A stretch of 64,000 bases of DNA from Octopus sinensis (lineage: Eukaryota). The notes beneath the pieces were generated by a model. The model saw only the letters and a program-made list of their open reading frames with translations, was not told the DNA's origin and did not search any database. Each line of letters begins with the position of its first letter. The stretch's first letter is position 1. The stretch covers positions 62,372,001 to 62,436,000 of the forward strand of contig NC_042997.1 of NCBI RefSeq assembly GCF_006345805.1. The letters are read 5' to 3'. Shown here piece after piece: positions 12,859 to 42,594 of this stretch. The position numbers and the translations under genes are program-made.

Positions 12859-13060
12859 CTATCTCCGCATAGCCTTCTCAAATTCATCGTAATCAATTTT
12901 CCCATCCCTACCAGAAACTGCATCAAACATCACTTTAAGGTCCTCATCAGTGTACTTCATACCATTTTGTTTCAATACCTGTTCCACCTCACATTTGGTG
13001 AGGAAGCCAGATTTGTCTTTATCCATCTCCTCAAAAGCTCTTCGCAACGCCTTTGGGTCG
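12859..13060 (-). CDS. Calmodulin-like protein, exon 3 (EF-hands 3 and 4, stop)
   Basis: Acceptor cttttctccatctAG; first base C completes AAC with exon 2; DPKALRRAFEEMDKDKSGFLTKCEVEQVLKQNGMKYTDEDLKVMFDAVSGRDGKIDYDEFEKAMRR*. Total CDS 150+86+202=438 nt = 145 aa + stop. Confidence 0.92.
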
Positions 13061-13920
13061 CTAGATGGAGAAAAGGTTTAGAAAAAGTAAGTAACATTAA
13101 TTACTATATAAAACAATGCATTATAAAAAAAAGCAATAAAAAAATAAAGGTTTCTTTTGTATATGTAGTTTATTTTCTGTCTTTGTATGTTAATGACATA
13201 ATTGCTATTACTGAAGATTTAACTAGGCTACTTGTAGCCGAATTATGTGGGTACTATAAAACTAGTTGATAGGACAGCGGTTTGTATCCTGTCATCTACA
13301 CTATGCTGACATCATGGAGAAGACTTTTAACAGTTGACTCTACAAACCCTTAGCTTGAGAAGTTTTGTATTAATGACAGGTGCATTAACTTTCAGTGTAA
13401 ATTTTATTTCTTCTAACTAGAAAACCCCCTTCTATAGAAGAGATAATCCCGATACTTAATAGATTCCATCTAACCAGAGTGTGGAATTTATGTCTCATTT
13501 CGTGGACAAACGAAAGAAGAGCAGTCAACCCATTTATTGGGAATTACATATATGAATAAAAGAAGTTTGATTCAAATATGTTGGTACTCAAATTCAAAAT
13601 ATGATTTAGAGATTTTTAATAAACATGCACTTTATTATAAGAGAGCCCTGCATGAGGCATTATATAATAATAATATTTAATTCTTTAATATTTGTAAATA
13701 TAATTATAATATAAAGGATTATAATATAAGTGATTTTTATAATAATAAACCTAATTTTCTGAATTATGATAAGTTTTCTTTAGGTAACTATGGTCTTAAT
13801 AATAATAGGTATTATGATAACATAAATCATACATTTAATATGGAATAAAAAATAAGATTAAATTTAATTCAATTAATGATGATAATAAATTTAATAATAT
13901 TACAAAGAAGTGTAATAATG

Positions 13921-14011
<91 letters not shown>

Positions 14012-14029
14012 CAACAACAACAACAACAA

Positions 14030-15919
14030 CAACAAGAAAATATGGTGAATTGTTTCTTTTGGGGCTCAGCTAAAAATAAATGTTATTAACGAGATTTTAA
14101 ATATAATTGAAATGCTCATTAGGGATAATAAAAAATATAACATTTTTTCTAGTAATAATTTTGGAGTTGGTTATTCTACTACTAATAATGTTAATAATAT
14201 TATTACAAAAAGAAATTAAATAATTATTCCAATAATAATAATAAAGACCATGATATAATTTATTGTACATGTAGAGATAAGACTACATTTAAAATTAGTA
14301 ATAAGTGTAATTTGGATAATGTTGTTTATAAATGTATAGTAACTTTAATTGATGATAATAATACGAATGATTATAATTTAAACGCGATCTACATAGGGTC
14401 GACTTCGAATAAAATTAAATTAAGGGTGGCTCAACACATGTATTCTTTTAGAAATCTGTATTCTTTTAGAAATCTAATTCTATAGGCCTCACTAAATATA
14501 TTTGGGAACTTAAATCTAAATGTATTAAATATAATTTAACTTGGGAGATCATTTGTAAGGCAAAATCTTATTGTATAGGTAGTAATTCTTGTTTATTGTG
14601 TATTAATGAATTTAAGGAAATATTATTTAATAATAATTATATATTGGTTAATTCCCGAGATTAGCGTAAAATTAAATGCAAACATAAATTAAATTACTTA
14701 TATAATAAGTTTAGCTAATTTTTCCATATATATAAAACCCCATTTTATGTTACTAATTTACTGTAGATATAATTTAAAGTAGTATTAGTGTATAAATTAG
14801 CATGATATATGTTATATTACATTATTTGAATACGCTTAAACTTGGATGTTTCTTAATAATTAAATGAATATATAAATTAATGAATATCTATTAATTATAG
14901 TAATATAAATTAATTTAACTATATTATGTATATTTTACTTATTTCCAGTAAATAGTAATTTATAGTTTAGTTTTTTGTTCTCTTATTCTCTGATTCTAGA
15001 AGCTTAAATATCTTTCGTCATTTTCATTAATATAATACATACTTCTATACATTTATTCTATTTTTTACGCAACGTCTTCAAATTTCTTATAAACGCTAAG
15101 GTCTACGTTTTTACGTTTAAAATCAGATAAAAAATTTTCATAGATAAGTAATGAATTTTTTTTATAACAATATTATTGAATTTTGAATTGAATTTTGTTT
15201 GATTATTATTGTAAAAATATTGATTTCTATATTGTTTTTCTATATTATTTCTATGATTTCTATATTATTTGATAATTATAAGTTACGATACGTATATTTA
15301 TTTACTTAGTATTTTTATTATTGTTATTATCTTGTGAATTAACGTATTACATATAATTTACACCGGGAAATAGTTTTGTAAGTCAAAATCTTATCGAATA
15401 GGTAAGAATTTTTATTTGTTATGTAATATTATATTTAAGTAAATACTTTTAATAATAATTGAAGCTTTGGTAATTCTATAAATGAGTGTAATATATAAAT
15501 TGTAATATATATAAATTGAATTAATTATATAGCAAGTTTAACTAATTTGTGTGTATATATTTGAACCATGTTTCTATTTTTAATTCTTGTACTCATAGTT
15601 TGTAGTAGTATTGTGTATATAAGTTAGCATGAAGTTTTTTAGTATATATTACTTAATTAGAATAAGACTTAACTTAGATGTTTATTAAATAAATAAATTA
15701 ATAATTTAATGTATATAGATTAAATTATAGTAGTTTAGCCGAATAACTGAAGAGATGGCGGCGTGGATTTCCACCTCGGAGTTTTATCATGGCTACCAAA
15801 TAATTGTCACGTATTACTCTTACAGATAAATTCCTCTATTTATATAATATCGAAGTATCTTTCTTTCTTTTGTCATCTTACCGTTTTTATCACTATATAT
15901 ATGTATGTATGCATGTATG

Positions 15920-15954
<35 letters not shown>

Positions 15955-16400
15955 TTAAATATTTTGTTTTGATTACTTGTATTTTAATTTTCCAATAATG
16001 ATATACTATAGTTTGTTATGTTTTCTTCTATAAGCTGAAATATATTTTCATAGATGAAATAAATATTTATTCTAGTTTTATTTACACCACGTTTTTAACG
16101 AGATAAATTTATTATAAACAATAAGTCCTACGTATTAAGTTTAAAGATTTAGTTAACAGAATATTTTTGATAAGATATTTGGTATTTTTATTTTAAGATA
16201 TATTGTTGAATTTTGTTCGATTTTGTATTGAAAAATTACGTATTTTTATATATATTTATATTTTCTTATTTCCATCTGGGACCTGATGAATGATTATTTA
16301 ACTTGAATTGATTTTACTGTTATCAGTTTTAAAATATAGCCCTGAAACACGTGTAGTCTGTTTACTAATTATATACTATTCATTTATTATTTCGTACTTT
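14030..16400 (+). mobile_element. Decayed AT-rich Penelope-like element in intron 2 (antisense to host), 3' part tandemly duplicated
   Basis: GIY-YIG-type AIYIGSTSNKIKLRVAQHMYSFRN...GLTKYIWELKSKCIKYNLTWEIICKAKSYCIGSNSCLLC; 14550-15330 recurs degenerately at about 15365-16250. Confidence 0.75.
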
Positions 16401-16556
16401 ATTTAGTTCTAGGCAAATGTTTTATCGTATCTTTAATTTTTTTCTATATGGCATGATTTAATTATGTCATTGTTGAATTGCTACATGGTGGATCTTCTCT
16501 AATTTATACACATACATACATACATACATACATACAAATAATCATATACATACATG

Positions 16557-16606
<50 letters not shown>

Positions 16607-16634
16607 ATATTATATATATATATATATATATATC

Positions 16635-16688
<54 letters not shown>

Positions 16689-16788
16689 GAGCATCGTATC
16701 TCCAGTCTTCGCTTTTCTATAACATTTAGAAAGATATTACGAAGTAAGATAGGGATATGAAAAAGTAAACTGAGGTGTATAAACTTAC

Positions 16789-16874
16789 TTAAGACTAGGT
16801 TTGCTCATCGCTTCAACGAACTCACACTTGCTTATTTTGCCATCACTGTCCACATCCATGTCTTGCAATACGCT
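16789..16874 (-). CDS. Calmodulin-like protein, exon 2 (EF-hand 2)
   Basis: Acceptor ttattcttacAG, 86-nt exon SVLQDMDVDSDGKISKCEFVEAMSKPSL+AA, donor GTAAGT at 16788 (phase 2); canonical loop DVDSDGKISKCE. Confidence 0.9.
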
Positions 16875-19620
16875 CTGTAAGAATAAAATGGTATTAGTAG
16901 CAGTTTTAGTAACAGTTATATGAATTTCAATATTAGTTACGATGGAGGCTAATACAAATTACAAAATCACTTGTTTCTCGTGCACTCAATCAATATATCC
17001 TACGTACATCGACCACTATCGATACATCCTGAGTACGTCGACATGATTTTAAGTTGGTGAATTCGGAATGTAGTGAGAAGCTTTCAGGTTATTTGTTTGA
17101 ACCTTCTTTTAATTTATTATACACAAGCTGCTGTAGTGATTTTTAAATGGGATGATGACTTTATGTTTAATAATATTGTTTACGACATGAACTTTTGAAC
17201 ATTGATCTGTATTGCACTTTCTACTTTTCATTTCTATACCTTGTTATCAGTTTCGTCTGCTCCTGTGTGGGTCTGTTATGATTTTTGTTTATGCCTCAAA
17301 CTAATGTAATAAAATGGACTATCAATTTTCTACAACGGCGTTGACTTTTATTTCATCTTATTTTTGTATGTCTGTTGTGTAGATGTACAGTGTTAGAGAG
17401 TTCGGTCTAACGACCCTTGAATTTTAAGGTGGATAAAAGTGTGAACCCTAATGACCATATTCATGTAAAGAGCAGTGTCTTCAGATATTGTCAGGGTTGA
17501 AACGTGTAATGATGGAGCAATGCTAATAAAATCTATAACTGATGAAATATGGTGTGTGTTCGTCATCGGAAATTGACAGTAAAGAAAGAAATAACTTCAT
17601 ATTTTGCTTTGTTTGGAATCATCCAGATGAGTGAGATGGTTTATAGCTAACCCATAGCATTTTGTAACCATTGATGATTTATTTGAGTCCACAAATTTAT
17701 TAGTGGAGTTAAGCTATAAAATGTCTCTGGTAGTAAATAGCTTAGCACTAAGAAATTAATAAATAAAATATACAGGTTTTTGAGGCCAACAAATTAACGG
17801 AAAGAGAAATACATCACTTCTTTCATTCTTCGTTTAGTTACCAAATACTTTTTAAAATCCCACTGATTTTTGGAACACTGTCATATGTTGGAAGATCTAT
17901 TATTAACTCAACCATGACAGGGCACTATAAGGAGCTTAGAAATAATGAAACAACGTGACTTCAATCCCATTTAAAGTTCTTCCATGATTCCAACTACGAA
18001 ATACGTCATCTTGTGTTATCTATCTTCAGTTAAGTAGTGCCTTGGCTCTAGAAACTGCGTAACACTGGTAACAGGAGACAAATCATCACAAATTGGGCTA
18101 CACACTTTCCTCTATTGATTATATTGCTATTTTAATGCAGAATATTGATTCCTTTTTACTTGACAAAAGAAAGTCACACTTTAGTGAAAGAGAATAGTAA
18201 TTTCCTAAAAGAATTATCTATCTCAGTAAAAATCGCTTGAAACTGAAGTGCTACACTACCATTCCTAAAACCTAACGTCTCATTGTCGGTTGCTCTCTAC
18301 AAATAGGAACACATAGTCGTTACTGAACTCTATAGCGAATGTTAATTTTCTAAGAGAGACATTTAACAAGTTCTGTCCTTGATCTTATGCTAACGAAAAC
18401 TAAGATCACCAAACAAATTCAATGTGAATATTCAATTTATAACAGAACCTGACATTTGAAAAGTATTTTGATGTGGGTGGTAGAACTATATTTATCATGA
18501 AGGTATTCCACAGAAATATGTTATTAGCATATCGACATATATGGTACATTTGGAACCGTGATGAGTGTCATAATGTTACTCTTTTTCAACAAAACCACTA
18601 CAAATACTGAAATATATATATAGAAAATGTTGTGACATTAGAAATGTCAGGATGTATCATTGTAAATATGCTTTCATATTTTAGTTCTGCTCAAACTGAA
18701 ACTGAACTAATGATGAAAAATCAAAGCACTCACAAGGATTGTATTTTTTTGATAATTAGTATTCTTTTATACGAAAATGGTAAAGTGAATGAAGAATAAA
18801 ATGCTAGAATAAAATCTTTGTGGTATTTAGTTTAGAAAATAATTCACTTCCCAGTGCAATTAACTTAACCTTTAGTCTCGAATTGGCACTACTGATCAAC
18901 TTTTATCGAGATCTGTCTTACCTGTTGTTTCCTTGTCAAATACTAATAACTCATCCTCTATCTGTTAAATGTCTTCGCTATAGACGCTAAGAAGGGCAGA
19001 AAGTGAGATCCAAATCATAGTCCCAGCAATGACTACAAAGTCTATGAACTAATCATAATTCACCCCTACATGGATGATTCTAAATAAAGTACAAATAATG
19101 AATACATCACACTTTTAAAATATTGATGTCTTTATCGACACAAGGCCAGAAAGACGGATGGATATAATCACTCATATTGACATTAATAATTCATAGGCGC
19201 AATTTCATGCTAAGTACAATTTCATGCTAAGCAGATCGCAAAGTGATTCGCAATTTACACGTAGAGAGGTGTGATTCTCGCTGCCCCAGCGATTATGCTA
19301 AAGATATACAATGAAAGAAAGACTGTTAAAAGGTTCTGCTAAGGGCTGCATGCAGAAGAAGGGACTTAAAAAGTAATATAAAATTTTACTTGAACAGAAA
19401 TATTAAATAAGAATTCACAACTTGATGGTTTAGTCGGTTTCACTATTTGAATTCACAAATATATTATTACACTTATTTTCAAAATAGTAAAAATGAATGT
19501 ATGTATGTATGCATTCCCTGGTTCTTACAAATTCGAAGAAGACATAGCACAATACGTTAAACAGAGTATATACATGCATACACACACACACATATATATA
19601 TATATATGTATAAATCTTAC

Positions 19621-19770
19621 CTTGAAAGTTTGGCGAGATACATTTATACCTTTGTCATATAGACTGTCGCAAAGCTCATCAAGGCTTAAATAGTTACCGC
19701 CTTTTTTATCGATGCTTTCAAAATGTTTCTCCCAAAATTTTGGATTGTTTCTGTCCCTATTAGCTGACAT
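19621..19770 (-). CDS. Calmodulin-like four-EF-hand protein, exon 1 (proximal variant; EF-hand 1)
   Basis: ATG-initiated MSANRDRNNPKFWEKHFESIDKKGGNYLSLDELCDSLYDKGINVSRQTFK (150 nt), then phase-0 donor AAG|GTAAGA at 19620; TATAAAAG about 110 nt upstream. Confidence 0.88.
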
Positions 19771-19877
19771 GTTTCTTGGTTTTGTATCTAAATCTAACTC
19801 TTGTTAGTGCTGTTATGAGATTAGTCTGTGCGTTTACGTAATAAAAGCTTTTAATACTTCAAAACTCGGGTATACTA

Positions 19878-19885
19878 CTTTTATA
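19878..19885 (-). promoter_or_regulatory. TATA box of proximal exon 1
   Basis: TATAAAAG about 108 nt upstream of the ATG at 19770. Confidence 0.6.
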
Positions 19886-19924
<39 letters not shown>

Positions 19925-21332
19925 CATATGTGTGTTATATGTACAATTAACTGTTGGTCTGCTTACTCACCTCTGTTAATTAGCATTTACAATATCATTT
20001 ATGCTATTTTCAGGTTTTCAGAATGTGGATTTGTTTTAAAACTCTCAATCAATTTAAATCTGTCGGTCACGGTCATTTTATATTACAAACGTGGTGTATC
20101 ATTAAAATTATCATTCTTACTTAATTATATTGCTATTTTCTCCCCTTTACGACATTTTTCTCTTCTTTTTTTTTGTCGTTTCGTCTGTTGACATTAGCCC
20201 TGATGACTACTTTGGCTTTCAAACACATGTAATTCTTTTAACACATACGAGTGCGCAAGCAACTATAATGAGTATCTACGTTAATTAACACGTGTAATAG
20301 GGTAGCAAATTGGTCGCTAAACGAAAATAGATGGCGCAGGTTAAGTAGACTAGTTAGTTGTCAATCATTGACTAGAGAGATACATTCCAACAAATTAAGC
20401 AAAGTATTTAAATCAAATCTTTGTAGATGGGAATGAAACTTCTCTATTCCAGAGAAGTTTTATAGCGTTATAGAACAATACAAAAATTTCAATGTATTTC
20501 AGCAAAAATGTCATGAACCTAACTACCCTTGAACAACAGTTGGAACATTCACAATCCGTATGAATGTTACCAATGCAGTCGTTGATTAGCTTTGACGGTA
20601 AACCATGTGTATTTCTTTTTATAAGACAATACTGCATCACAGATAATATATTTCCGTTATGAAAGTGGAACGTGATTTAATTTTATACAGAACCCAAATA
20701 TCTTTTATCGCAGATTGTACATGTACACTCAGGACAATACCCAAAGAAAAGGCTATCCATTTGATAGGTGAGCTTTTTTAAGCAACATACTTGATGATAA
20801 ATGAATTTTGCTTTTCTTACTGTTAATTGTAAGGTCTAAACTCCATTAGATAAATTGAGTGAATAGTACTGCGATAAACTACGCGTAGCTCTCCTCAGTG
20901 CAGTATTTCTTCTCTTCATGGCATTCCTACAGTGTCTAAAGTCATCCCAGATTGCATACTTAACTTTACATTCAGCCTTTACTCTCCGGAACTGAATTCG
21001 TTTTCGTCGTCCCTATTACCTGTTTTAACTCACGTTACTAACTCTTGCAAGTTAGTGGTTGGAAAGAAACTTAGACGACTGATCGTAGTTAACTATATTA
21101 CGTACTATCCGCTAAGTCTCGAAGAGCCCGTAGCTGTTGTTGTTGTTATCGTTGTTAACTCCGGCTAACTCCAATGGAGTAAACCCATGAACAAAGCGTT
21201 TCCAGCTATGGCATTGTCATCTCTGACATAGTATACATAGGACCACATTGTGTCCGGTTTGCATGATTTGAAGATTTGGTTGCTATTCCTTGCTGGACGA
21301 CTCAACATATCGAAGCTGCTGTTGTTGGTTCC

Positions 21333-21380
<48 letters not shown>

Positions 21381-21384
<4 letters not shown>

Positions 21385-21473
21385 GCGTCCTACATGAATT
21401 CAGGTTTCAAAATTATAATAGAAATATTTAAATCTAATATAATTTCTTTCATTTATTAACCAGAGAAAAGCTG

Positions 21474-21570
<97 letters not shown>

Positions 21571-21656
21571 GCGTCCTACATGAATTCAGTTTCAAAATTA
21601 TATAGAAATATTAAATCTAATATAATTTCTTTCATTTATTAACCAGAGAAAAGCTG

Positions 21657-21717
<61 letters not shown>

Positions 21718-21801
21718 TCTCTGGTTAATAAATGAAAGAAATTATATTAGATTAAATATTTCTATTATAATTTTGAAACCTGAATTCATGTAGGACGCAT
21801 T
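21381..21801. repeat. Three copies of a ~95-bp unit (direct, direct, inverted) separated by (TA)n
   Basis: TAATGCGTCCTACATGAATTCAG...AACCAGAGAAAAG at 21381 and 21568, and inverted at 21712-21801. Confidence 0.9.
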
Positions 21802-23091: not shown

Positions 23092-23125
<34 letters not shown>

Positions 23126-31613: not shown

Positions 31614-31789
31614 GTATGTGTATATATATATATATGTATGTATGTATGTATAAAGATATACATAAAGATATATATATATATATATTATATATATATATTA
31701 TATATATATATATATATATAATATATATATATATGTACCGAAGTAAGCACATAAATGTGAAACAAGGTGGCAAAAAGAGTACTCAAATA

Positions 31790-32155: not shown

Positions 32156-32876
32156 TATATATATATAAAGAGATAATTGAGATTAAGTTGAATTAGGTAA
32201 GTTGAAGCACCAAGTCAGTGCGGTATTATCCGTACAACTCAAAGTAAGGTGAATAAATTTAAAATAAGCAACAGGATATTAAGAGGTGATGCAGTACGAC
32301 CGTTTCAAACGGCTCCATTTAATTGAATAATGCAATCATTACATCAATTCAAATGCAGAGATATCCTCATCTGCATAAATAAATATAATTTTTTAATCAG
32401 TTGGACACATTAATATAATTTTACTCAAATTCTCTAATAGACCAAGAAGAGGGAGAAAGTCCATGTTGCTACTAATGTAACTCAGAATATACTACACTTC
32501 TAAGAACTGATGAAGTTTGTTAGGGTCATAGTATGTAAAGGATTGTGGTTCCTTTTTAACTTATTTGTCTTTTTTATCAACTACCAAATCTTAAGGTCAG
32601 TATCTGCGAATACATCTGATACATTGCACCACATGCAGCGATTGCTACTTCGACAGTAGGAATTGGCATTTATGTATCTAAATGAAAGAACTCGTCATCA
32701 GATGCGCCTCAGTTTTCCGAAAATAGATCGTGATATGTGTCAATGCCAGTAAGTACAAAATCGCCACCATTTCATCTACAAAAATCAACGTTGGGAATCA
32801 ACAGATTCAAAAAACAGCCATTATAGAAATAGATCAGTTGAACATATCACAGTGGCTAATCTAACCAAGCTGCTGC

Positions 32877-32909
<33 letters not shown>

Positions 32910-34917
32910 TACCACTACCACCACCACCACCACTACCACCACTATCATTGCTGCTTTGGCTACTTCTGCTACTTATGTTGTTTTGGCAACCATAGTGGAT
33001 GGAAAATTGAACTAGTATTACCAAGGCCGTTACTGATACTTCTAGTTGACAGCTGAATGGAAATTTGAGCCACTAATTCCTCCATTGCCTTTCTCCACCC
33101 GTGCCCTCACGCATGTTAGTTCCTACACTGAAATGTAACTGAACAGTTATGTAATTCAATTCTCTGGCGCTTCCTTTAGATTTTCCCTTCATTAGGGGAT
33201 GTAAAAAGCTAATAAATATTTCCAAGGCAACATTCAAACTGTTTTCATAATTATAAATTGCTGACATTTATAACGCCATTTGCATTGCATTAGTTTCTTA
33301 AAACGAACTCCTTTTTCTTTAAAATATTTAAAAACAATCTTCCACACTAACCTTAAAATCATATAAAGCTAGGGTATTTTTATTCTCTTTGTCCCAGAAG
33401 AAGTTTCTAAATAGGCACCTCCAGAATAGTTTTTCAATCCTAATTAAAGGATGGTAGCCTGTCATTTTCAATAATCGCAGACAGGCTTACACTTCTGTTT
33501 TAAATACAGAAGCTGATTGTTACGCTGAATAAAACGATTTCATTCTCAGTGATCGTTTCCTATCAGGATTATACACAACAATACGAATGTAGTTGTATTC
33601 AAAGGAGCAAAGGGATGGCTGTTACTCAATGAATTTTTCATAAGAAGCTGTAAGTAGGTTTCTTCTCTCTCCCCATTTTACCAGTACGGAAGCAGTACAT
33701 ACACCATACGAACTTGTGAAATATGTCAAATCAGTCGAATTGTTCTTCACTCTGTTCTGTAAAAAAATCTCTTGCCTTTTAACCTCGTGGCTTTACAACA
33801 ACGGTAAATCTGTATATTTACGAATAAATGAATCAGAAATTGGACCAAATTAGAATATTGCATGCATGTATGTGTGTAATATACGTAAATATATGTATTT
33901 CTATCTATCTATCTATCTGTATATCTATTTATCTAGCTATTTTTCTATCTATCAACATATCTACTACATATGTGGCAAATCGGTGTGTGTTTGTGGCGTT
34001 GTTGGCTAACTCCTCCTACATGGTAGTATTGTTTTTGATGAAACTTGACCCATGAGTACAACTCATATCTAGAAAGCTCGTGACATACTTAGATTGTTGA
34101 AAAAATCTATAATACGGCCCCTGGAAGGGACCTTTATATCTACCTCATATAACACTTTTTCCATGACAGTAGATAATTTTTGTTATTCCACAACGTATTT
34201 GTTGTGGCTTACTGCAGGCATAGCGTGGATTCGACCCTCGATTGCCAAATTTCACTTAACACTTCAACAGTGCTTTTCTCATGGTAAGACAATAGTTTTT
34301 CTGTGAATGATAGCAGTTATTCAATTCACAGATGCCTTCGCTAAGCAGAATAATGTCTTTTCCTCTGGCCAACCTCCGACAACCTCTCTCACCAACACGC
34401 GACTATCTCTCTCTCCTCCAGCTGACAGTTTTTGTACTGCTTCATGACAGAAAATACACCATTTGTGACAGTTATTACGAAATTGCTTTCTTATATCAGA
34501 GTAATAAGACGTTTCAGTGGATGGGGAGAGGAGTTTCGGATCAGGAAGTTTCCCCGTTTTGACGTAGATTTTCTCCATTTTTTTTACCACAGCCTTCGGA
34601 ATAATGGCGCTGATGCGGGGAGGGTACATCTTATGTATGACAAAAAAGTTTATAAATTTTTTGTTACCCCCCCCCCCCAAACACACACTCATCGTCCCAC
34701 TCCAGACCGGTTTTGGCCATATTTTTTCTTTGCACTCTCAAACCATGCAAGCAGCCTATTCGGTAAAAAAAACAAACAATTGTAAATATTTTCAGAGGAA
34801 AAAGTATGTGATTTAAGGTTGTTGTTTCTAGCACATCCCAAGACCATACTCCTCGATTCTTTCTCACTCTCGCATGTATTGGTGTTTTTCAATATTTTTC
34901 TCTCGATAATGCGGCGT

Positions 34918-35116
34918 GCTGGCAGAAACGTTAGCACGCTGGATGAACTGCTTACTAGTGTTTTGTGCCTTTATGCCTGAGTTCAAATGCCGCCGAGGTC
35001 AACTTTTCTTTTCATCCTTTTGGGAACGATAAGTTAAGTACCAGTTGAGTACTGAGGTCTAATCGACTGGCGCCCTCCCCCCAAATTTCGAGTCTTGTGC
35101 CTAGAGTAGAAAAGAA
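34918..35116 (-). mobile_element. SINE family C
   Basis: GGCACAAG..CTGGTACTTA..CCCAAAAGGATGAAAAG..AAAGTTGACCTCGGCGG..; other copies at 40592-40795 (-) and 51650-51870, 52025-52226, 58960-59130, 59145-59355, 60975-61185 (+). Confidence 0.75.
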
Positions 35117-35395
35117 TATTTTTCTCCCCATCAACACATTTATGTTATAAAAAAAATTTGAAAATTTATGAAATTTTTTCAGCCTGATTGTTTCTGCTTA
35201 TAATTTAAAATATTGGAGTCTGATGCATTTATCTTGATGAAATTGCAGCGACTATGATGAATAATTTCATACAGAGCAATGTACAGTTGCTGCAGTAGAA
35301 ACACATGTTAGGCATTGTTAAACGTGATGCTGCAGAAAACTTTTTAATAAAAGAGTTTGGGATGTGAATAAATATCCATTCTCCTCTTTGTTTTC

Positions 35396-35458
<63 letters not shown>

Positions 35459-35811
35459 CGTGCGTGTGTGTGTGTGTGTGTGTGTAAGTATATCCTGGTG
35501 TGTGCGAGTGTGTGTGAATGTGTGCGTTTAACTCACCAGGAAGGCAGTCATTCATAGATCATGTAATAACTAACAATTTTCCATTTAGTAAAACTGTTCT
35601 AATTATAGCTTTCCAAGTGTCTGAATAGGTAAGTTTCTACAGGTGACTATGATAGTGAGTTAAAGAGAGAGAAGGAGAGAGAAAGAAAAAAATAGTTTTA
35701 AACGGAGACGAATTTAAATACATACGAACATGTATTTGATTACTTACAAATACAACAAACTTGTTCGTGTGTTTGTGCATATGTACATACATACATACAC
35801 ACACACACACC

Positions 35812-35849
<38 letters not shown>

Positions 35850-35869
35850 ATATTATATATATATATATA

Positions 35870-35914
35870 TATGTATGTACGTAAATAGTATATATTTATA
35901 TGCACAGGCATATA

Positions 35915-35948
<34 letters not shown>

Positions 35949-35993
35949 TATATGCCTGTGCATATAAATATATACTATTTACGTACATACATA
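35870..35993. repeat. Perfect palindrome centred on (TA)n
   Basis: TATGTATGTACGTAAATAGTATATATTTATATGCACAGGCATATAGAC-(AT)n-exact reverse complement. Confidence 0.9.
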
Positions 35994-36101
35994 CACACAA
36001 AAGCACATATATAGTATGGAGTGCAACTATAAGTTTGTGTCTGTGTGTATAAATACATATATGTAAATGTACGTTTATATATGTTAATATAGGTATATAT
36101 A

Positions 36102-36136
<35 letters not shown>

Positions 36137-36367
36137 TTCTTTCTTTCCCTCTCACTATCTCTGTATATATATATAAATATATATATACAACACATGCATA
36201 CATGTGCATATACATGCATACAAACCATCGCATACAGATTTTTCCACAGCGTGACCTTGTGGAAACTATTGTATATTGATGTGGTTCTGCGTGTATACGT
36301 GTTGTTATTTGTGTATGCTTATTGTATTGTGTATGCTTATTGTCATGTATTAAAATAAACCACTAAC

Positions 36368-36502
36368 CTTTAGTGCCCCTTCGCTGACATGAATGTTTTT
36401 CTTTTTGAGACCAATACTAAGTTCTTCAACCGACAAATTTCCATCCTTCGATGTATCAAGTCCATCGAAGATTGCTGCCCATTCTTGTTTTGATTGATTC
36501 AT
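36368..36502 (-). CDS. EF-hand first exon, variant 2 (no own exons 2/3 found)
   Basis: MNQSKQEWAAIFDGLDTSKDGNLSVEELSIGLKKKNIHVSEGALK, 135 nt, canonical loop DTSKDGNLSVEE, phase-0 donor AAG|GTTAGT; too short for the ORF track. Confidence 0.82.
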
Positions 36503-36640
36503 TTCTTATGTTATATTTTTAGAAAGAAAAACCTTAAGATGAGATAGTACAAGATTCACAAGAATCACAAGTTGCGTAGAAGTTGAGGTTGAACGTTCGT
36601 AACTTCTGCACTATGAACTGTGAACTAATGAAATTGTGTC

Positions 36641-36648
36641 ATTATATA
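36641..36648 (-). promoter_or_regulatory. TATA-like box of variant-2 exon
   Basis: TATATAAT at the position homologous to TATAAAAT in variant 3, about 139 nt upstream of the ATG. Confidence 0.45.
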
Positions 36649-37514
36649 CCGCTACCGGTTTTTTTCTCTCCAATGATTTCCTTGCGTATATGAGTGTTTT
36701 TGTAAGTGTATATATATATCTACGATCTGTCAGTGAGCGCGTGTGTGTATGTGTGTCTGTGTGTGAAATTTCAGTATTGCTTTTGGTATTGTTGTTATTG
36801 TTGTTTTATAAATTAAAACAGCACAATCAAATCTTCAAAAAAGTACATTGATTATATTATCCCGATGTAGGTCGCACCCATCACTACACATGTTCTCTCA
36901 CACACTGTATACACGCACGCTTACCGCACATGCATATATGGGCTTACAATTACACACATAACACATACATACATACATACATACATACATACATACATAC
37001 ATACATACATACATACATACATACATACATACTACATACATACATACATGCAAACATATATTTCGCACACGGCCTTGACTCAAAACATCTCACGTATTTC
37101 AAAAGCAAACTATATTTTAATTACACTTTTTAAAAGAACCCGATGAGTGCAATCTTTTGGTGAAACCCCTGTTAATAGATATTTGATAGAAAAAAAGTTA
37201 TGCAGCTTTAAGTGATGAAAAAAGTGATAATTTGTTGTTTCCAACTTTTACTTACTTGCGGCCAATTTAATGCTTTACCACTAATTAAGTTTTAGCTCAA
37301 TCTTAATTCGGTTTATTGTGCTATAATGGACCATTTATAAGCTACATTTTGACATAAAATACTCGAAATTTGGTTCAGTAGAAAAAAAGTTATGATAAAA
37401 AGTGTAGGGCCAAATATAGGAAAGTGACGCCTAATATTTACTTTGATTCGTAATTTCTCAGTTATTTGAAAGAATATCTATACTTTAATTATGTCTGTTT
37501 AAAAGAACTCAATG

Positions 37515-39100
37515 AGTAGAATCTTTCGGGAAAGACCTCATGGGAGGCCTACCGTGTCCAGTTTGAACTATTGGCTGACCAGAATGGATTGGACGATGGG
37601 CAAAGAGCAGTTCAGCTTGCTACTAGTCTAAAGGGCGCTGCAGTAGAAGTACTGAGCTAGTTGACTGTAGAGGACAGAAGCTGTTCTCCTTCACTAGTGG
37701 CAGTGTTAGAGAGAAGATATGGCACTATGTGCTTAAGTGTACAGGGTACGATTTCGGGCCCGCATAAGGACTAGAAGAGAATCACTACAACAGCTTGCCC
37801 AGGAACTTTTGGCTCTTCTTCTGAAAGCAGTTCATCGACGCTTTGGGCAGTGCAGAGCTTAAAGTTCAAGTGAAGCATGCACAGTCGAATACTATACAAG
37901 AGGCATTGGCGAGAGCTCTGGAATTTGAGTCGTATGTAAGGTCTAGCACAGGAAGATTTCAGGTGGACTACAATTCCGGACTCAACGCAAAGAAGGGCAA
38001 GTACGTGAAGCAGGAAGATTTAATAAAAGTTGGTGGTATTGCGAAAAGGTCGGACATAACAGAGAAAGCTGTTTGAAGAAGAAAGAACAAGAGACGGTTG
38101 GAATATATTGTTGGTACTGTGGGAAGCCAGGACACAAGATGCAAGATTGTTACAAACTGAAGAGAGAGCAAAGGCAGAACAGTAGTAAAAAGTTCACACT
38201 TAGGAGAAAGTGTGAAACATGAGGTGAAAAGAGACTTCAGTTTTAACTGCCCTACACGAAAGAAGGATAGTAAGAAGGTAACGAAAGACAAAGGAGAGTC
38301 GGAAAACTAGGAAGGAGCTGGTGTAAATGGGCAACCGCCAGCCGAATATTCCAAAGAAGCCCCAACTCCGAGAAGATGTAAAAAGGCTAATTGACAGCAT
38401 ATAAGTGGATGGTAGAATTGACAACTAGAAGTGTCACCTTGTGATTGATTCGGCTTCGGAGCAGACTTTTGTGAGACCCGAGATGTCACAGCATCGATAC
38501 CTACCAGAGTTATCACGGCAGTTGTGCGGTGTTACCGGACAGTGTACTGAACTGAGAAGACCGGTTGATGTCCTGATTGAAGTTGTAGGACGAAATGTCG
38601 TGCTTCTAGTCTACGTGGTGGAGATGGAGTGTCTCTGTCTCTTGGTTTGGACTACTTGGCGACTATGGGGTGTCAATTGGACTTCTGCTCCATGAAGCTT
38701 CGGGTGAAAGAAAGATTAGTCCCTGTCAAGATGGTAAAGCAGACTATTGCTGGTGGTGAAGTGAAAGCGTTACGGACGATAGTGATCCCACCGAAATCGG
38801 AATTTCTACTCCAGTGTAGTGTGAAGCACCGTATTAACACAGGAGATCGTCGCCCAATCGAGAAACCGGCTTGAGAGATGGCACCAGTGCAGTGTAAAGA
38901 AATGGAACGTTCTGAAAGAGAAGTCAATGTGGAAAGATGTCTGCGAGATGAAAGAAATGTCGAGTCAGAATTGCAAAATGTTCGCCAAAACTTTGTAGGG
39001 GAGGCCAAATCTTTCCACGAAGTCAAAGAAAAACATACGCAGTGGTTGCAGAAATGTGATAGGAAAAACATGAACCAAAAAATAGATATTTTAATGAAAT
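37515..39100 (+). mobile_element. Ty3/Gypsy gag-protease remnant
   Basis: SGKTSWEAYRVQFELLADQNG, zinc knuckle CWYCGKPGHKMQDC, protease VIDSASEQTFV and GLDYL; many stops. Confidence 0.85.
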
Positions 39101-39446
39101 AAGATGGGAAACCAAGTGTTCTCAGAGAACACAGACAACAGCCGACTGTCAGAAAATAAATTTCAGCTGATCCGAGAAATTAACGAACTGAATGCGAATA
39201 TGTTGCAAACAGAAAAAATAAAAAGGAGCTGAGAAATTAACGAACTAAAGGTGAATATGTTACAAAAAGAAATCAGACCCTGAAAATTAACAAACTAAGG
39301 ACGAATATCTTACAAAAAAAAAAAAAAATACGGGAAGAGATACAGTGCAACATGCATGAAAGGATTGCTGTATAAAAGACGCAAATTGAACATCGCTCTC
39401 TCGTTTTGCAAGCGAAGACGAAAAAGATAATTATTTGTGGACGCAA

Positions 39447-39484
<38 letters not shown>

Positions 39485-39542
39485 TGTGTGCGCACGTGTG
39501 TGTGTGTGTGCGCGCGCGCACGTGTGTGTGTGTGTGTGTGTG

Positions 39543-39590
<48 letters not shown>

Positions 39591-41199
39591 TGTAATGTGT
39601 AGGTGCAATGGTTCAGTGGTTAGAGCAGCAAACTCGCGATCATAAGATCGCGGTTTCGATACCGAGACCGGGCGTTGTGAGTGTTTATTGATCGAAGACA
39701 CCTAAAGCCCCACGTGGCTCCGGCACGGGTAGGTAGCGAACCCTGCTGTACTTTTTCACCGGCCATGGTTACGCGTGTCTGTGGTTTGCTCACCCATTTG
39801 CACGTTAATTTCACGAGCAGGCAGTACCGTTGATTAGATCAACTGGTACCCTCGTCGTCGTAACCGACGGAGTGCCGTAAAAATATAGGCATACCTACGG
39901 ATGTGTATCCCACCTGATTTTGTTGCTTCATAAGGTCCAGAAAAATGGATACTTTTTAACTAAATTTTCAACAAATACTGCTTAGATGTTCTAAATTTAG
40001 AGTATCCTGGGATTTGTTGCAAATAATGTTTGGAGAGAGAAGTGTTGGAAAATTCAAACGATCCGAATTTTTTCCCTTTTAACTTTCAGGAAAATGAGTA
40101 TCTTTTAATGAAAGTTTATACAACTATCTTTCAAACGGCATAGATTACGATTATAAAGAAATTTTGGGTGGAAATTTTATCTGAGTGGATGGGGAGAGGA
40201 ATTTCGGATCAGGAAGTTTCCCCGTTTTGACGTGGATTTTCTCCATTTTTTATTTTTACCACAGCCTTCGGAATAATGGCGCTGATGCGGGGAGGGTACA
40301 TCTTTTGTATGACAAAAAAGGTTATAAATGTTTTTATTACCCCCCCCCCCACACACACACACTCATCATCCCACTCCAGACCGGTTTTGCCATATTTTTT
40401 CTTTGCACTCTGAAACCATGCAAGCAGCCTATTCGGTAAAAAAAAACAAACAATTGTAAATATTTTTCAGAGGAAAAAGTGTGTGATTTAAGGTTGTTGT
40501 TTCTAGCACATCCCAAGACCATACTCCTCGATTCTTTCTCACTCTCGCATGTATTGGTGTTTTTCAATATTTTTCTCTCCATAAGGCGGCGAGCTGGCAG
40601 AAACGTTAGCACGCCGGGTGAACTGCTTACCAGTAATTTGTGTCTTTATGCCTGAGTTCAAATGCCGCCGAGGACGACTTTTCCTTTCATTCTTTCGGGG
40701 ACGTTAAATTAAATACCAGTTGAGTACTGAGGTCTAATCGACTGGCGCCCTCCACCAAAATTTCGGGCCTTGTGCCTAGAGTAGAAAAGAATATTTTTCT
40801 CCCCATCAACACATTTATGTTATAAAAAAAATTTGAAAATTTATGAAATTTTTACAATTTAAAATATTGGAGAGTCTGATGCTTTTGTCCAGCAATTAAA
40901 AAAAAAGTTATGTAAGAGATAATTCATTTTAATAACACTTTTCTGTAAGAATATGCTTTTTCTTACACACACAGACACACACAACACATACACACACACA
41001 CACACACACCACACACACACACACACACACACGGTCTCGATTGAGTGAGGTGGAGGTAACAATTTTAATTGCTATTTTTTTTGCCACTTATACCCCACCA
41101 ATGGACCACATGTGCGTTACTTCAGCATCATCATGTCATAAAATGTGTTTAATGAAGAAAAATAGTGTAAAACATGTGAAAAAAACATGTGAGAGTGAA

Positions 41200-41480
41200 A
41201 ACGGAGTGCTAGAAACAACAGCCAAATCTCCTTTGAATCGCACACCTTTTCCTCCGAAAATATTTACAATTTTTTTTTTACCGAAAAGACACCTCCCGTG
41301 GTTTTAAAGTGCAAAAAAATTGGTCAAAATCGGTTCGAAGTGGGATGGTGATAAGGGGAAAGTAATAAAAAATTTTCAAAACTTTGTTATAAAAAGATGC
41401 CCACCAATCCCATCATTTTGAAGGATGTGGTGAAAAAAATCTCCGTCAAAACGGTGAAATTACAACTTATGAAAATTTTC
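41200..41480 (-). repeat. Inverted, diverged copy of the unclassified repeat at 34510-34915 and 40185-40590
   Basis: GTGCTAGAAACAACA..GAAAATATTTACAATT..TTACCGAA..GTGGGATG..TCTCCGTCAAAACGG matches the reverse complement of those copies. Confidence 0.7.
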
Positions 41481-41710
41481 TGGAAGTTATGAGGCAACAA
41501 AGTCGGTGGTGGAGTACACATCTATAGAGATGCTTATATGTATATATACATATATGTATATATATGCACACATGCATACATATGCACATACATGCATACA
41601 GACCTACGAACACAGATTTTTTCACAGCCTAAGCTTGTGGAAGCTATTGTATATGGATGTGTTTGTGTGTTATGTATGCTTATTGTGTTAATCCAACTTA
41701 AATCACTAAC

Positions 41711-41845
41711 CTTTAGTGCCATTTTGCTGACATTAATGTTTCTAGCTTTGAGACCAACATCAAGTTCTTCAACCGACAAACATCCATCCTTGTTTTTATC
41801 AATTTCATCGAACTTTGCTTCCCATTCTTGTTTTGTTAGATTCAT
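41711..41845 (-). CDS. EF-hand first exon, variant 3 (no own exons 2/3 found)
   Basis: MNLTKQEWEAKFDEIDKNKDGCLSVEELDVGLKARNINVSKMALK, canonical loop DKNKDGCLSVEE, donor AAG|GTTAGT at 41710. Confidence 0.84.
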
Positions 41846-41971
41846 CTCTTATGTGTTATATTTTCAGAAAGAAAATTCTTAAGACGAGATAGTACAAGAT
41901 TCACAAGTTGTGTAGAAGTTGAAGTCGAACGTTCTTCTGCACTACAAACTGTAAACTAAAGAATTCGTGAC

Positions 41972-41979
41972 ATTTTATA
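41972..41979 (-). promoter_or_regulatory. TATA box of variant-3 exon
   Basis: TATAAAAT about 127 nt upstream of the ATG at 41845. Confidence 0.5.
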
Positions 41980-42594
41980 TGCAGCTACTGTTTTTTTTTT
42001 TTTGCTTCCATCCAATAATTTCCTTGCATATATAAGTGTATGTACATGTGTGTGCGTTTGTGTGTGTTTGTGTCTGTAAGTGTATGTATCTGCGACCTGT
42101 CAGTGTGAGTGCGTATGTGTGTGTTTTCGTGCGTGGGAAACTTCGGTGTATATGCTTCTGTAATTATTATCGTTATTTTATAAAGTAGAACTACACAATC
42201 GAAACTTCCGTTGAGGCATATCATGAAAGGAAAACAGAAAGTGTCTGAGACTTCAAATAAAGAGCAATTGTTTTTCCCATGTAGGTCTCACACGCACAGA
42301 CACACCGACAAACACTCACTACACTCATTCTCTCGTATACATGCACGCTTACACAAATGCATATTAACACGTACACTTACACATACATGCATACATACAT
42401 ACATGCATACATTCATACATACATACATACATACATACATACATACATACATACATACACACACAAATACAAATGCATACGCAGACATGTATGTATATTT
42501 ATGATAGTGAGTGTATGTATAGCATGTATGGTGAATGTAGAGGGCAGCTGCCGATCGTCAGCATCACTGAGCTCTAGATAAAACATGGTGAGAT

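What the first reader, a model, noticed from the sequence alone, without database searches (positions are those of the whole stretch)
12859..41980. Candidate variable-first-exon calcium sensor: three promoter-bearing EF1 exons, one set of constant exons
Seen: three minus-strand exons (19770-19621, 36502-36368, 41845-41711), each with a TATA(-like) box, ATG, one EF-hand and a phase-0 AAG|GT donor. There is only one exon 2 (phase-0 acceptor, 16874) and one exon 3. By-eye scanning found no exon 2/3 paralogue in 19.9-36.3 kb or 37.1-41.7 kb; the latter interval is almost all Gypsy/SINE/repeat. Inference: alternative promoters splice different EF1 modules onto shared EF2-4, as clustered protocadherins and UGT1A do (established for those loci). 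I do not know this architecture for a calmodulin-like gene. The proximal EF1 loop (DKKGGNYLSLDE) lacks acidic ligands at positions 3 and 5, while the distal loops (DTSKDGNLSVEE, DKNKDGCLSVEE) are canonical, so isoforms could differ in calcium binding.
Basis: partly seen in the sequence, partly recalled or inferred. Interest (0 to 1): 0.92.

Follow-up and report, generated by a model that had tools for sequence, protein, structure and literature searches.

The report
Octopus calmodulin-like gene, three alternative first exons
This is a real Octopus gene for a small calmodulin-like calcium-binding protein that can start from any of three alternative first exons, each encoding a different first calcium-binding site; public annotations already list the isoforms, and the more unusual point is that most of its coding sequence has diverged far faster between octopus species than the surrounding non-coding DNA.

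Summary
Observation confirmed. On the minus strand there are three ATG-initiated, phase-0, EF-hand first exons: 1a 19770-19621, 1b 36502-36368 and 1c 41845-41711. There is exactly one exon 2 (16874-16789) and one exon 3 (13060-12859). All three joins give intact 145/140/140-aa four-EF-hand proteins. The window is Octopus sinensis chromosome CM016859.1. The three predicted proteins match, residue for residue, RefSeq isoforms X1-X3 of one gene. O. vulgaris (independent assembly, transcript-informed annotation) carries the 1b and 1c forms. O. bimaculoides RefSeq carries 1b-like and 1c-like isoforms. Sensitive tblastn and nhmmer find no second exon 2 or 3 in any of the three loci. Exons 1b and 1c each have a TATA box 29 nt upstream of an Inr-like ACAGTT, invariant in both paralogues and both species. 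The TATA-to-ATG segment is the best-conserved part of the duplicated unit. So the alternative-promoter, variable-first-exon reading is supported, but no reads were examined here. It is a small new member of a common kind (KChIP-type alternative first exons; the ACTN1 EF1 swap), not a new architecture. Unexpected extra: between O. sinensis and O. bimaculoides the coding parts of exons 1b, 2 and 3 are 73%, 86% and 66% identical, while their flanks are 90-98% identical. That is accelerated evolution confined to the coding sequence.

The parts
41711..41845 (-). Exon 1c coding part (45 aa, MNLTKQEWEAKFDEIDKNKDGCLSVEELDVGLKARNINVSKMALK). It has a canonical EF1 loop DKNKDGCLSVEE and the donor AAG|GTTAGT in phase 0.
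   Evidence: It is the exact N-terminus of XP_029645601.1 and CAI9715179.1. Pfam EF-hand_1 24.5 bits, EF-hand_6 25.4 bits. It is 94% identical to the O. bimaculoides orthologue.
41846..41979 (-). Putative 1c core promoter and 5'UTR. TATAAAAT is at 41979-41972. The Inr-like ACAGTT is at 41952-41947, with the predicted +1 A at 41950, 29 nt after the first T of the TATA box. The predicted 5'UTR is 105 nt and has no upstream ATG.
   Evidence: TATA and ACAGTT are invariant in O. sinensis and O. bimaculoides 1b and 1c (alignment A1). Transcription start use is inferred, not measured.
36368..36502 (-). Exon 1b coding part (45 aa, MNQSKQEWAAIFDGLDTSKDGNLSVEELSIGLKKKNIHVSEGALK). EF1 loop DTSKDGNLSVEE; donor AAG|GTTAGT in phase 0.
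   Evidence: It is the exact N-terminus of XP_029645593.1. Pfam EF-hand_1 18.8 bits, EF-hand_6 21.5 bits. It is 73% identical to the O. bimaculoides orthologue, against 90-92% for its flanks.
36503..36648 (-). Putative 1b core promoter and 5'UTR. TATATAAT is at 36648-36641. ACAGTT is at 36621-36616, with the predicted +1 A at 36619 (spacing 29 nt). The predicted 5'UTR is 117 nt and has no upstream ATG.
   Evidence: Paralogue identity from TATA to ATG is 0.88, against 0.65 far upstream.
19621..19770 (-). Exon 1a coding part (50 aa, MSANRDRNNPKFWEKHFESIDKKGGNYLSLDELCDSLYDKGINVSRQTFK). It has a degenerate EF1 loop DKKGGNYLSLDE and the donor AAG|GTAAGA in phase 0.
   Evidence: It is the exact N-terminus of XP_036357478.1. 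Only EF-hand_6 matches, at 16.4 bits. AlphaFold2 still models helix-loop-helix: H10-20, E27-29, H30-39.
19771..19885 (-). Region upstream of 1a. TATAAAAG is at 19885-19878, 115 nt before the ATG and next to a (TA)n run. No CAGT-type Inr lies at the expected distance.
   Evidence: The promoter is inferred only. The O. bimaculoides counterpart lies in an assembly gap.
16789..16874 (-). Constant exon 2 (86 nt), encoding EF2 with loop DVDSDGKISKCE. Phase-0 acceptor; donor AA|GTAAGT in phase 2.
   Evidence: It is the only copy in the window.
12859..13060 (-). Coding part of constant exon 3. It encodes EF3 (DKDKSGFLTKCE) and a shortened, non-canonical EF4 (VSGR-DGKIDYDE). The stop TAG is at 12861-12859. 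A candidate AATAAA lies about 25 nt downstream.
   Evidence: It is the only copy in the window. It is 66% identical to O. bimaculoides, against 91-98% for its flanks.
41539..42473 (-). The 1c copy of the old tandem duplication unit (promoter, exon 1 and the start of the intron). It is paralogous to 36162-37054.
   Evidence: Self-blastn gives 69% identity over 998 nt; alignment A1.
36162..37054 (-). The 1b copy of the tandem duplication unit.

Best explanation
This is one Octopus gene for a roughly 140-aa calmodulin-like protein with four EF-hands, transcribed from three alternative promoters.

How it works (inferred): each promoter sits directly upstream of its own first exon. That exon carries a 5'UTR, an ATG and a complete first EF-hand, and ends in a phase-0 donor. 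The transcript's own first exon is spliced to the single phase-0 acceptor of exon 2. First exons further downstream are removed as intron, because they offer a donor but no in-frame acceptor.

The result is three proteins with identical EF2-EF4 and different EF1: canonical in 1c, slightly weaker in 1b, and ligand-poor in 1a, which probably does not bind calcium. The N-lobe would therefore differ among isoforms in calcium sensitivity and probably in its binding surface.

1b and 1c arose by an old tandem duplication of promoter plus exon 1, before the O. sinensis/O. bimaculoides split. 1a is a much older or more diverged paralogue.

Shown here: the exons, frames and splice signals; the single constant exons in three assemblies; exact identity of the three predicted proteins to annotated isoforms in three species; and the conserved TATA and Inr.

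Inferred: promoter use, junction use, tissue specificity and differences in calcium binding.
For: The exons and in-frame joins are established.

All three isoform proteins match RefSeq isoforms X1-X3 exactly. The NCBI gene that carries the 1a product spans from the 1c ATG to the stop.

O. vulgaris comes from an independent assembly and pipeline, in which alternative forms are added only by PASA from Iso-Seq and RNA-seq (PMC10700109). It has the 1b and 1c forms.

O. bimaculoides RefSeq has the 1b-like and 1c-like isoforms.

There is one exon 2 and one exon 3 per locus in three assemblies. The O. sinensis and O. vulgaris loci are collinear at about 99% identity.

TATA-N-ACAGTT with 29-nt spacing is invariant in the four 1b and 1c sequences. 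Only 12 such combinations occur on this strand in 64 kb. The TATA-to-ATG segment is the most conserved part of the 1b/1c unit: 0.88-0.89, against 0.65-0.78 far upstream. The predicted 5'UTRs have no upstream ATG.

The coding part of 1b evolves about three times faster than its flanks, as do the constant exons. This pattern is expected only for translated sequence.

EF-hand profile scores fall in the order 1c, 1b, 1a. The whole protein aligns to calmodulin.
Against: No RNA-seq, Iso-Seq or CAGE reads were inspected. No transcript contigs for these proteins were found in the collections searched.

Gnomon and EVM models can be driven by protein alignments or ab initio prediction, so the three annotations are not fully independent evidence of expression.

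The conserved '...tttagttCACAG|TT' could also be read as a 3' splice site.

1a has a TATA box but no recognisable Inr. Its conservation cannot be judged: O. vulgaris is about 99% identical overall, and the O. bimaculoides region is an assembly gap.

Exon 1c evolves at about the neutral rate (94% identical, flanks 96%), so constraint on it is not demonstrated by the species comparison.
Confidence: 0.8

Rival explanations
1. One shared upstream promoter and a non-coding leader exon, with 1c, 1b and 1a used as mutually exclusive internal exons. On this reading the choice is made by splicing, not by promoter.
For: The sequence just before the predicted start sites (ttctttagttCACAG|TT in 1b and 1c...cgcacag|ac and ...ataacag|ca in 1a) resembles a polypyrimidine tract followed by AG. 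The gene ranges returned by the tools cover only the coding region, so UTR exons are unknown.
Against: A TATA box lies exactly 29 nt upstream of the A of CAGT in both 1b and 1c and is invariant in four sequences. That is the classic TATA-Inr geometry, and a 3' splice site does not require it. Conservation peaks from the TATA box onwards, not only from the AG. No candidate leader exon was identified.
Confidence: 0.1
2. 1b and 1c are non-functional relics of partial duplications of the promoter and first exon. The annotated distal isoforms would then be artefacts of the prediction pipelines, and only the 1a form would be made.
For: No reads were seen here. Neutral divergence between the species is low (5-10%), so an intact 135-nt ORF could persist by chance. 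1c evolves at about the flank rate, with omega 0.69 on 8 differences.
Against: The 1b/1c duplication is much older than the species split: the non-coding parts of the unit are only 65-69% identical. Yet both copies keep ATG, ORF, donor, TATA and Inr in both lineages. The coding part of 1b is significantly more diverged than its flanks (Fisher p 1e-5), which neutral decay does not produce. O. vulgaris alternative forms were added from transcript assemblies, and that annotation lists the distal forms rather than the 1a form.
Confidence: 0.07
3. Assembly artefact: there are really three complete tandem genes, and their exon 2-3 copies have been collapsed or lost from the assembly.
For: None was found.
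Against: The same five-exon layout, with one exon 2 and one exon 3, is seen in the O. sinensis and O. vulgaris assemblies. Neither locus contains any N, and the two are collinear. The gapped O. bimaculoides assembly shows the same layout. The intervals between first exons align as ordinary intron sequence between species.
Confidence: 0.02

Closest known systems
KChIP genes (KCNIP1-4): alternative promoters and first exons on a constant four-EF-hand core
   Same: A constant set of 3' exons encodes an EF-hand calcium-binding core. It is preceded by several transcription starts and alternative 5' exons, which give variable N-termini with isoform-specific expression (PMC3973911).
   Different: In KChIPs the variable exons encode N-terminal targeting segments that lie before the EF-hand core, and all four EF-hands are constant. 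Here the variable exon is itself EF-hand 1. The two protein families are not closely related.
ACTN1 (alpha-actinin-1) exons 19a/19b
   Same: [quoted passage not shown] This is the same functional logic as the canonical 1c and 1b loops against the ligand-poor 1a loop.
   Different: Those are internal exons chosen by splicing, not first exons chosen by promoter, and they sit in a large actin cross-linking protein. The calcium-binding difference was measured there. Here it is only predicted.
Clustered protocadherins and UGT1A (variable first exons, each with its own promoter, spliced to constant exons)
   Same: There is a tandem array of paralogous first exons. Each encodes a complete N-terminal functional module, has its own upstream promoter-like element and a donor, and joins one constant set of exons. 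This rests on established knowledge.
   Different: There are only three variable exons (possibly four in O. bimaculoides), against about 9-58. The variable exon is tiny (45-50 aa). There is no evidence of stochastic or enhancer-mediated choice. The proteins are unrelated.
Calmodulin and calmodulin-like proteins
   Same: The full length aligns to calmodulin structures at E 1e-16 to 1e-22. It has two EF-hand pairs. The AlphaFold2 model has four helix-loop-helix units.
   Different: It is only about 30-40% identical to any non-Octopus protein. It has a shorter, proline-containing inter-lobe linker and an 11-residue EF4 loop. It also evolves extremely fast, unlike calmodulin itself.

Membership tests
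EF-hand / calmodulin-like four-EF-hand proteins | Two pairs of helix-loop-helix EF-hand motifs in a protein of about 150 aa | tested here: met
   Pfam EF-hand_7 matches twice, E 1e-25 to 1e-28. The protein aligns to calmodulin over residues 7-138. The AlphaFold2 model has four helix-loop-helix units.
EF-hand / calmodulin-like four-EF-hand proteins | Canonical 12-residue loops with oxygen ligands at positions 1, 3, 5 and 12 | tested here: inconclusive
   EF2, EF3, EF1c and EF1b are canonical by inspection. EF1a has K3 and G5. EF4 has an 11-residue loop lacking the ligands at positions 1 and 3. Calcium binding was not measured.
Calmodulin proper | Near-invariant sequence (over 90% identity across animals) | tested here: not met
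   It matches calmodulin chains only at 60-84 bits, and its best non-Octopus relatives are 30-40% identical. The two Octopus orthologues are only 66% identical.
Calcium-dependent protein kinase (the RefSeq product name of isoforms X1 and X2) | Ser/Thr kinase domain fused to a calmodulin-like domain | tested here: not met
   The proteins are 140-145 aa and have EF-hand Pfam hits only. The name was presumably transferred from plant best hits.
Variable-first-exon / constant-exon genes (Pcdh and UGT1A type; alternative-promoter genes in general) | Several paralogous first exons in tandem, each with ATG and a 5' splice donor, upstream of one set of constant exons | tested here: met
Variable-first-exon / constant-exon genes (Pcdh and UGT1A type; alternative-promoter genes in general) | Each variable exon has its own promoter | tested here: inconclusive
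   1b and 1c have a conserved TATA plus Inr at 29 nt. 1a has a TATA box only. No transcription start data were available.
Variable-first-exon / constant-exon genes (Pcdh and UGT1A type; alternative-promoter genes in general) | Each variable exon is spliced directly to the first constant exon in mature mRNA | not testable with these tools
   The support is indirect: exact matches to annotated isoforms in three species and the annotation method for O. vulgaris. No transcript contigs were found.
Variable-first-exon / constant-exon genes (Pcdh and UGT1A type; alternative-promoter genes in general) | Cell- or tissue-specific choice of variable exon | not testable with these tools
   No expression data were accessible.

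The most novel reading that the evidence does not exclude
The locus may be a small variable-exon array undergoing birth and death of first exons, in a calcium sensor under extreme diversifying selection.

The protein-coding parts of exons 1b, 2 and 3, but not their UTRs or introns, have changed 3-10 times faster than neutral DNA since O. sinensis and O. bimaculoides split. O. bimaculoides carries a further EF1-type first exon ('1d') that is absent from O. sinensis and O. vulgaris.

That would make this an evolutionary-conflict or rapidly re-targeted signalling protein, for example reproductive or immune. Its N-lobe would be diversified both by promoter choice within an animal and by positive selection between species.
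Probability: 0.2. Interest if true: 0.65.

Novelty: new member of a known kind. Interest (0 to 1): 0.4.

Why it matters
As a gene structure it is a clear, compact example of promoter choice swapping an entire calcium-binding site in a calmodulin-like protein. I found no paper describing this locus. It is directly testable: measure calcium binding of three small recombinant isoforms, and count junction reads per tissue.

It does not change how alternative first exons are understood, and the isoforms are already in RefSeq.

The more interesting lead is evolutionary. Calmodulin-type proteins are normally among the most conserved proteins known. Here the coding sequence is 66-86% identical between two congeneric octopuses, while the adjacent introns and UTRs are 90-98% identical. 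If that reflects positive selection, this is one of the faster-evolving intracellular signalling proteins known, and it points to an unknown, rapidly changing binding partner in octopus.

Tried and rejected
- **Hidden exon 2/3 copies.** tblastn (word size 2, E up to 100) and nhmmer --max on the window, the O. vulgaris locus and the O. bimaculoides locus found none.
- **Direct transcript evidence.** Exact-protein look-ups returned only the chromosome records, with no transcriptome or Logan contigs. The clusters hold only NCBI and UniRef entries. A scan of JGI metagenome contigs for the 1b/1c-to-exon-2 junction found nothing, which is uninformative.
- **Literature by accession or LOC number.** No paper was found.
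- **Orthologues outside Octopus.** phmmer against 1.84 billion representatives gave nothing above about 40% identity except O. bimaculoides. The top of the list was dominated by long multi-EF-hand proteins. The age of the architecture beyond Octopus therefore could not be tested.
- **Gene conversion from a paralogue as the cause of the exon hyperdivergence.** No paralogue was found with either species' constant region as query. The divergent block ends at the coding-sequence limits, not at the exon limits. Judged unlikely, but not excluded for an unannotated donor.
- **Fixation of A-to-I RNA editing as the cause.** Rejected: 70 of the 118 differences are transversions.
- **Differential loss of duplicated exons.** Rejected: the flanks are 94-98% identical right up to the splice site.
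- **Pfam on ORFs in the 37-41.7 kb interval**, to verify 'Gypsy'. No hits.
- **The bacterial promoter scan** is irrelevant to a eukaryote.
- **tRNA and Rfam scans** of the window found nothing.
- **The 1d peptide of O. bimaculoides** matches no annotated protein.


Full report
**What is in the sequence**

On the minus strand of the window there are three first-exon-like segments: 1a at 19770-19621, 1b at 36502-36368 and 1c at 41845-41711. Each begins with ATG, is open throughout, encodes one helix-loop-helix EF-hand and ends with AAG|GT in phase 0.

Downstream lies one exon 2 (16874-16789), with acceptor ttttattcttacag|AGC in phase 0. Its donor is AA|GTAAGT, in phase 2. Then comes one terminal coding exon (13060-12859, stop TAG).

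Joining any first exon to exons 2 and 3 gives an intact ORF of 145 aa (1a) or 140 aa (1b, 1c) with four EF-hands. The only addition is that the exon 2/3 junction splits an AAC codon.

**More than chance, and no hidden copies**

1b and 1c match each other at E 6e-14, and 1a matches 1c at E 1e-4, in a tblastn of the window.

That very permissive search (word size 2, E up to 100) found no other sequence resembling exon 2 or exon 3. Neither did an nhmmer --max search with two-species profiles of exons 2 and 3. The best spurious hits had E above 1.

**Identity of the locus**

The window is Octopus sinensis chromosome CM016859.1, assembly GCA_006345805.1. Locus L002 is identical to window 44845-9859.

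An exact-sequence look-up found all three predicted proteins already in RefSeq:
- XP_036357478.1, 'isoform X1', is the 1a form.
- XP_029645593.1, 'isoform X2', is the 1b form.
- XP_029645601.1, 'isoform X3', is the 1c form.

The gene record that carries the 1a product spans 28,987 bp, exactly from the 1c ATG to the stop codon. NCBI therefore treats all three first exons as one gene.

The product names 'calcium-dependent protein kinase 12/26' are misnomers. The proteins contain only EF-hand domains, and their best structural relatives are calmodulins, aligned over the full length at E 1e-16 to 1e-22.

**Independent assemblies and annotations**

The O. vulgaris chromosome assembly (GCA_951406725.2, locus L001) has the same order, 1c-1b-1a-2-3, with one copy of each exon. 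It is collinear with O. sinensis at about 99% identity, and neither locus contains an N.

Its annotation contains the 1c form (identical protein, CAI9715179.1) and the 1b form (CAI9715180.1). According to the genome paper, alternative forms in that annotation were added by PASA from Iso-Seq and RNA-seq assemblies (PMC10700109). This is indirect transcript support for the distal exons.

O. bimaculoides (locus L003) has a 1c orthologue, a 1b orthologue, one exon 2 and one exon 3. RefSeq lists both joins there. XP_052825944.1 (isoform X2) is the 1c form. XP_052825938.1 ('neo-calmodulin isoform X1') is exactly the 1b-like join that I built by hand.

The orthologue of exon 1a cannot be assessed. 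The aligned blocks stop at window 19949 and resume at 19575, on either side of a 407-N gap in L003.

Collapse of exons 2 and 3, or hidden copies, is therefore very unlikely.

**Promoters**

The 1b and 1c units are an old tandem duplication. Homology runs from at least 650 nt upstream of the ATG to about 170-330 nt downstream of the exon, at 69% identity over 998 nt.

In a four-way alignment (O. sinensis and O. bimaculoides, 1b and 1c), a TATA box and an ACAGTT motif are conserved. The TATA box is TATAAAAT in 1c and TATATAAT in 1b. In both units the A of CAGT lies 29 nt after the first T of the TATA box: 41979 to 41950 for 1c, and 36648 to 36619 for 1b. This is the classic TATA-Inr geometry.

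TATAWAW-N20-26-CAGT occurs only 12 times on this strand in 64 kb, and two of those are these sites.

Between the paralogues, the TATA-to-ATG segment is the best-conserved part of the unit. It is 0.88-0.89 identical, against 0.81-0.82 for the coding sequence and 0.65-0.78 far upstream.

The predicted 5'UTRs (105, 117 and 88 nt) contain no upstream ATG.

1a has TATAAAAG 115 nt upstream of its ATG, but no recognisable Inr.

I take this as good sequence-level support for separate promoters at 1b and 1c, and weaker support at 1a. Because '...tttagttCACAG' also resembles a 3' splice site, a shared upstream leader exon cannot be excluded without 5'-end data.

**Likely mechanism (inferred)**

Transcription starts at one of three promoters. 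The cap-proximal first exon is spliced to the only phase-0 acceptor, at exon 2. First exons further downstream are removed as part of the intron.

The products share EF2 (DVDSDGKISKCE), EF3 (DKDKSGFLTKCE) and a non-canonical EF4, and differ in EF1. EF4 has an 11-residue loop, VSGR-DGKIDYDE, which aligns with a one-residue deletion against canonical relatives.

EF-hand profile scores fall from 1c (24.5 and 25.4 bits) through 1b (18.8 and 21.5 bits) to 1a, which matches only EF-hand_6, at 16.4 bits. This agrees with K at loop position 3 and G at position 5 in 1a.

An AlphaFold2 model of the 1a isoform (mean pLDDT 71.8, a shallow six-sequence alignment) still folds exon 1a as helix-loop-helix paired with EF2.

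The N-lobe would therefore carry two predicted calcium sites in the 1c and 1b forms, and one in the 1a form. This was not measured.

**Comparison with what is known**

Alternative promoters with alternative first coding exons are common.
- Among EF-hand proteins, the KChIP genes have several transcription starts and 5' exons on a constant EF-hand core (PMC3973911). There, however, the variable part precedes the EF-hands.
- Replacement of part of EF-hand 1 by alternative exons, giving calcium-sensitive and calcium-insensitive isoforms, is documented for ACTN1 exons 19a/19b (PMC4435478). Those are internal exons.
- From my own knowledge, the fast skeletal myosin light chain gene (MLC1f/MLC3f) is another two-promoter EF-hand gene.

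The protocadherin/UGT1A comparison holds for the logic: paralogous first exons, each with its own promoter and donor, and one constant set. It does not hold for scale, and nothing is known about how the choice is made here.

I found no paper on this locus. I therefore file it as a new member of a known kind that is already present in public annotation.

**Unexpected finding: hyperdivergence confined to the coding sequence**

I compared O. sinensis with O. bimaculoides in 100-nt bins.

| Exon | Coding identity | Flank identity |
|---|---|---|
| Exon 3 | 66% | 91-98%, including the 3'UTR directly after the stop |
| Exon 1b | 73% | 90-92%, including its 5'UTR |
| Exon 2 | 86% | 95-97% |
| Exon 1c | 94% | 96% |

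Fisher tests of exon against flank give p 9e-25 for exon 3, 1e-5 for 1b, 6e-3 for exon 2, and no significance for 1c.

In exon 3, 33 of 67 codons differ at the amino-acid level, and 23 of those differ by more than one nucleotide. In exon 2, all 12 nucleotide differences count as non-synonymous.

Nei-Gojobori omega is 1.24 for exons 2+3 and 1.18 for 1b. dN is 0.35-0.48, against a flank divergence of about 0.05-0.10.

The calcium loops and the C-terminal IDY-EFEKA segment are kept. The changes cluster in the helices.

Alternative causes:
- A-to-I editing-related change is not supported, because 70 of the 118 differences are transversions.
- Differential loss of duplicated exons is excluded by the near-identical flanks.
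- No paralogue that could act as a conversion donor was found with either species' constant region.

The most likely cause is strong diversifying selection on the protein.

The caveats are that this rests on a single species pair, and that dS is also elevated in the exons. That elevation is partly a path-counting effect of the multi-nucleotide codon changes.

The pattern also argues that 1b is translated, because it shares the selective regime of the constant exons.

**Other observations**

O. bimaculoides has a fourth EF1-type first-exon module, which I call 1d. It lies at L003 30541-30413 and reads MCDINWGQVFEDIDKNKSGVLELEELFGHLNQIFPTLSIHTVE|GTTTGT, with a canonical loop, a phase-0 donor and a TATAAAA about 130 nt upstream.

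It sits on the opposite strand, in a 957-nt piece bounded by N runs, within about 20 kb that has no counterpart in O. sinensis or O. vulgaris. It is in no annotated protein. If that piece is mis-oriented in the scaffold, the array has lineage-specific members.

**Verdict**

It still needs junction and 5'-end reads.

Novelty of the architecture is modest. The evolutionary behaviour of the coding sequence is the more interesting lead.

Noticed in passing
window 12859-13060, 16789-16874 and 36368-36502, compared with L003 53474-53672, 49537-49622 and 16217-16351: Between O. sinensis and O. bimaculoides, the coding sequence of exons 3, 2 and 1b is 66%, 86% and 73% identical. The adjacent introns and UTRs are 90-98% identical (Fisher p 9e-25, 6e-3 and 1e-5). 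Omega is about 1.2, and many codons differ by more than one nucleotide. Exon 1c does not show this pattern (94% against 96%).
   Followed up: yes
L003 30413-30541 (minus strand), within L003 about 23000-43450: O. bimaculoides has a fourth EF1-type first-exon module ('1d'), with ATG, a canonical loop DKNKSGVLELEE, a phase-0 GAG|GT donor and an upstream TATAAAA. It is on the opposite strand, in a piece bounded by N runs. It has no counterpart in O. sinensis or O. vulgaris and is in no annotated protein.
   Followed up: partly
L003 46598-47004 (corresponds to window 19948-19576): The O. bimaculoides orthologue of exon 1a and its TATA box falls exactly in a 407-N assembly gap. Conservation of the proximal first exon therefore cannot be judged.
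   Followed up: yes
window 12859-12940 (EF4): The fourth EF-hand loop is one residue short (VSGR-DGKIDYDE; SKD-DNTIDYME in O. bimaculoides). It lacks acidic ligands at positions 1 and 3, so the 'constant EF2-4' probably holds only two canonical sites.
   Followed up: partly
window 34516-35181 and 40184-40856: A roughly 0.67-kb segment downstream of 1b and of 1c is 94% identical between the two units, while the exon-bearing parts of the units are only 69% identical. This could be gene conversion between the units or a younger repeat inserted in both.
   Followed up: no
window 1760-2248 (-), 6367-6828 (+), 11465-11914 (+): There are transposon remnants downstream of the gene: a Mos1/mariner transposase HTH domain (E 2e-22), a reverse transcriptase fragment (E 1e-12) and a weak zf-RVT match.
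   Followed up: partly
window 37843-39102 (+): Short plus-strand ORFs carry motifs that resemble, by eye, a retroelement gag/protease (IDSAS..., LLGLDYL).
   Followed up: partly
window about 40608-40743, 34933-35068, 52058-52210, 51717-51840, 58979-59101, 61013-61145: A roughly 150-nt interspersed repeat family (SINE-like) recurs in the window and in the O. bimaculoides locus. No tRNA-like or Rfam match was found.
   Followed up: partly
window 13920-14045 and 16560-16690: Intron 2 contains long microsatellites: (TTA)n/(TTG)n of about 120 nt, and (TA)n of about 130 nt.
   Followed up: no
protein P0137 (WP_395241646.1, 'Salmonella sp. s51933'), on a 508-nt contig: A 140-aa four-EF-hand protein, 40% identical to the octopus protein, is filed under Salmonella. 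It is probably eukaryotic contamination in a bacterial record.
   Followed up: no
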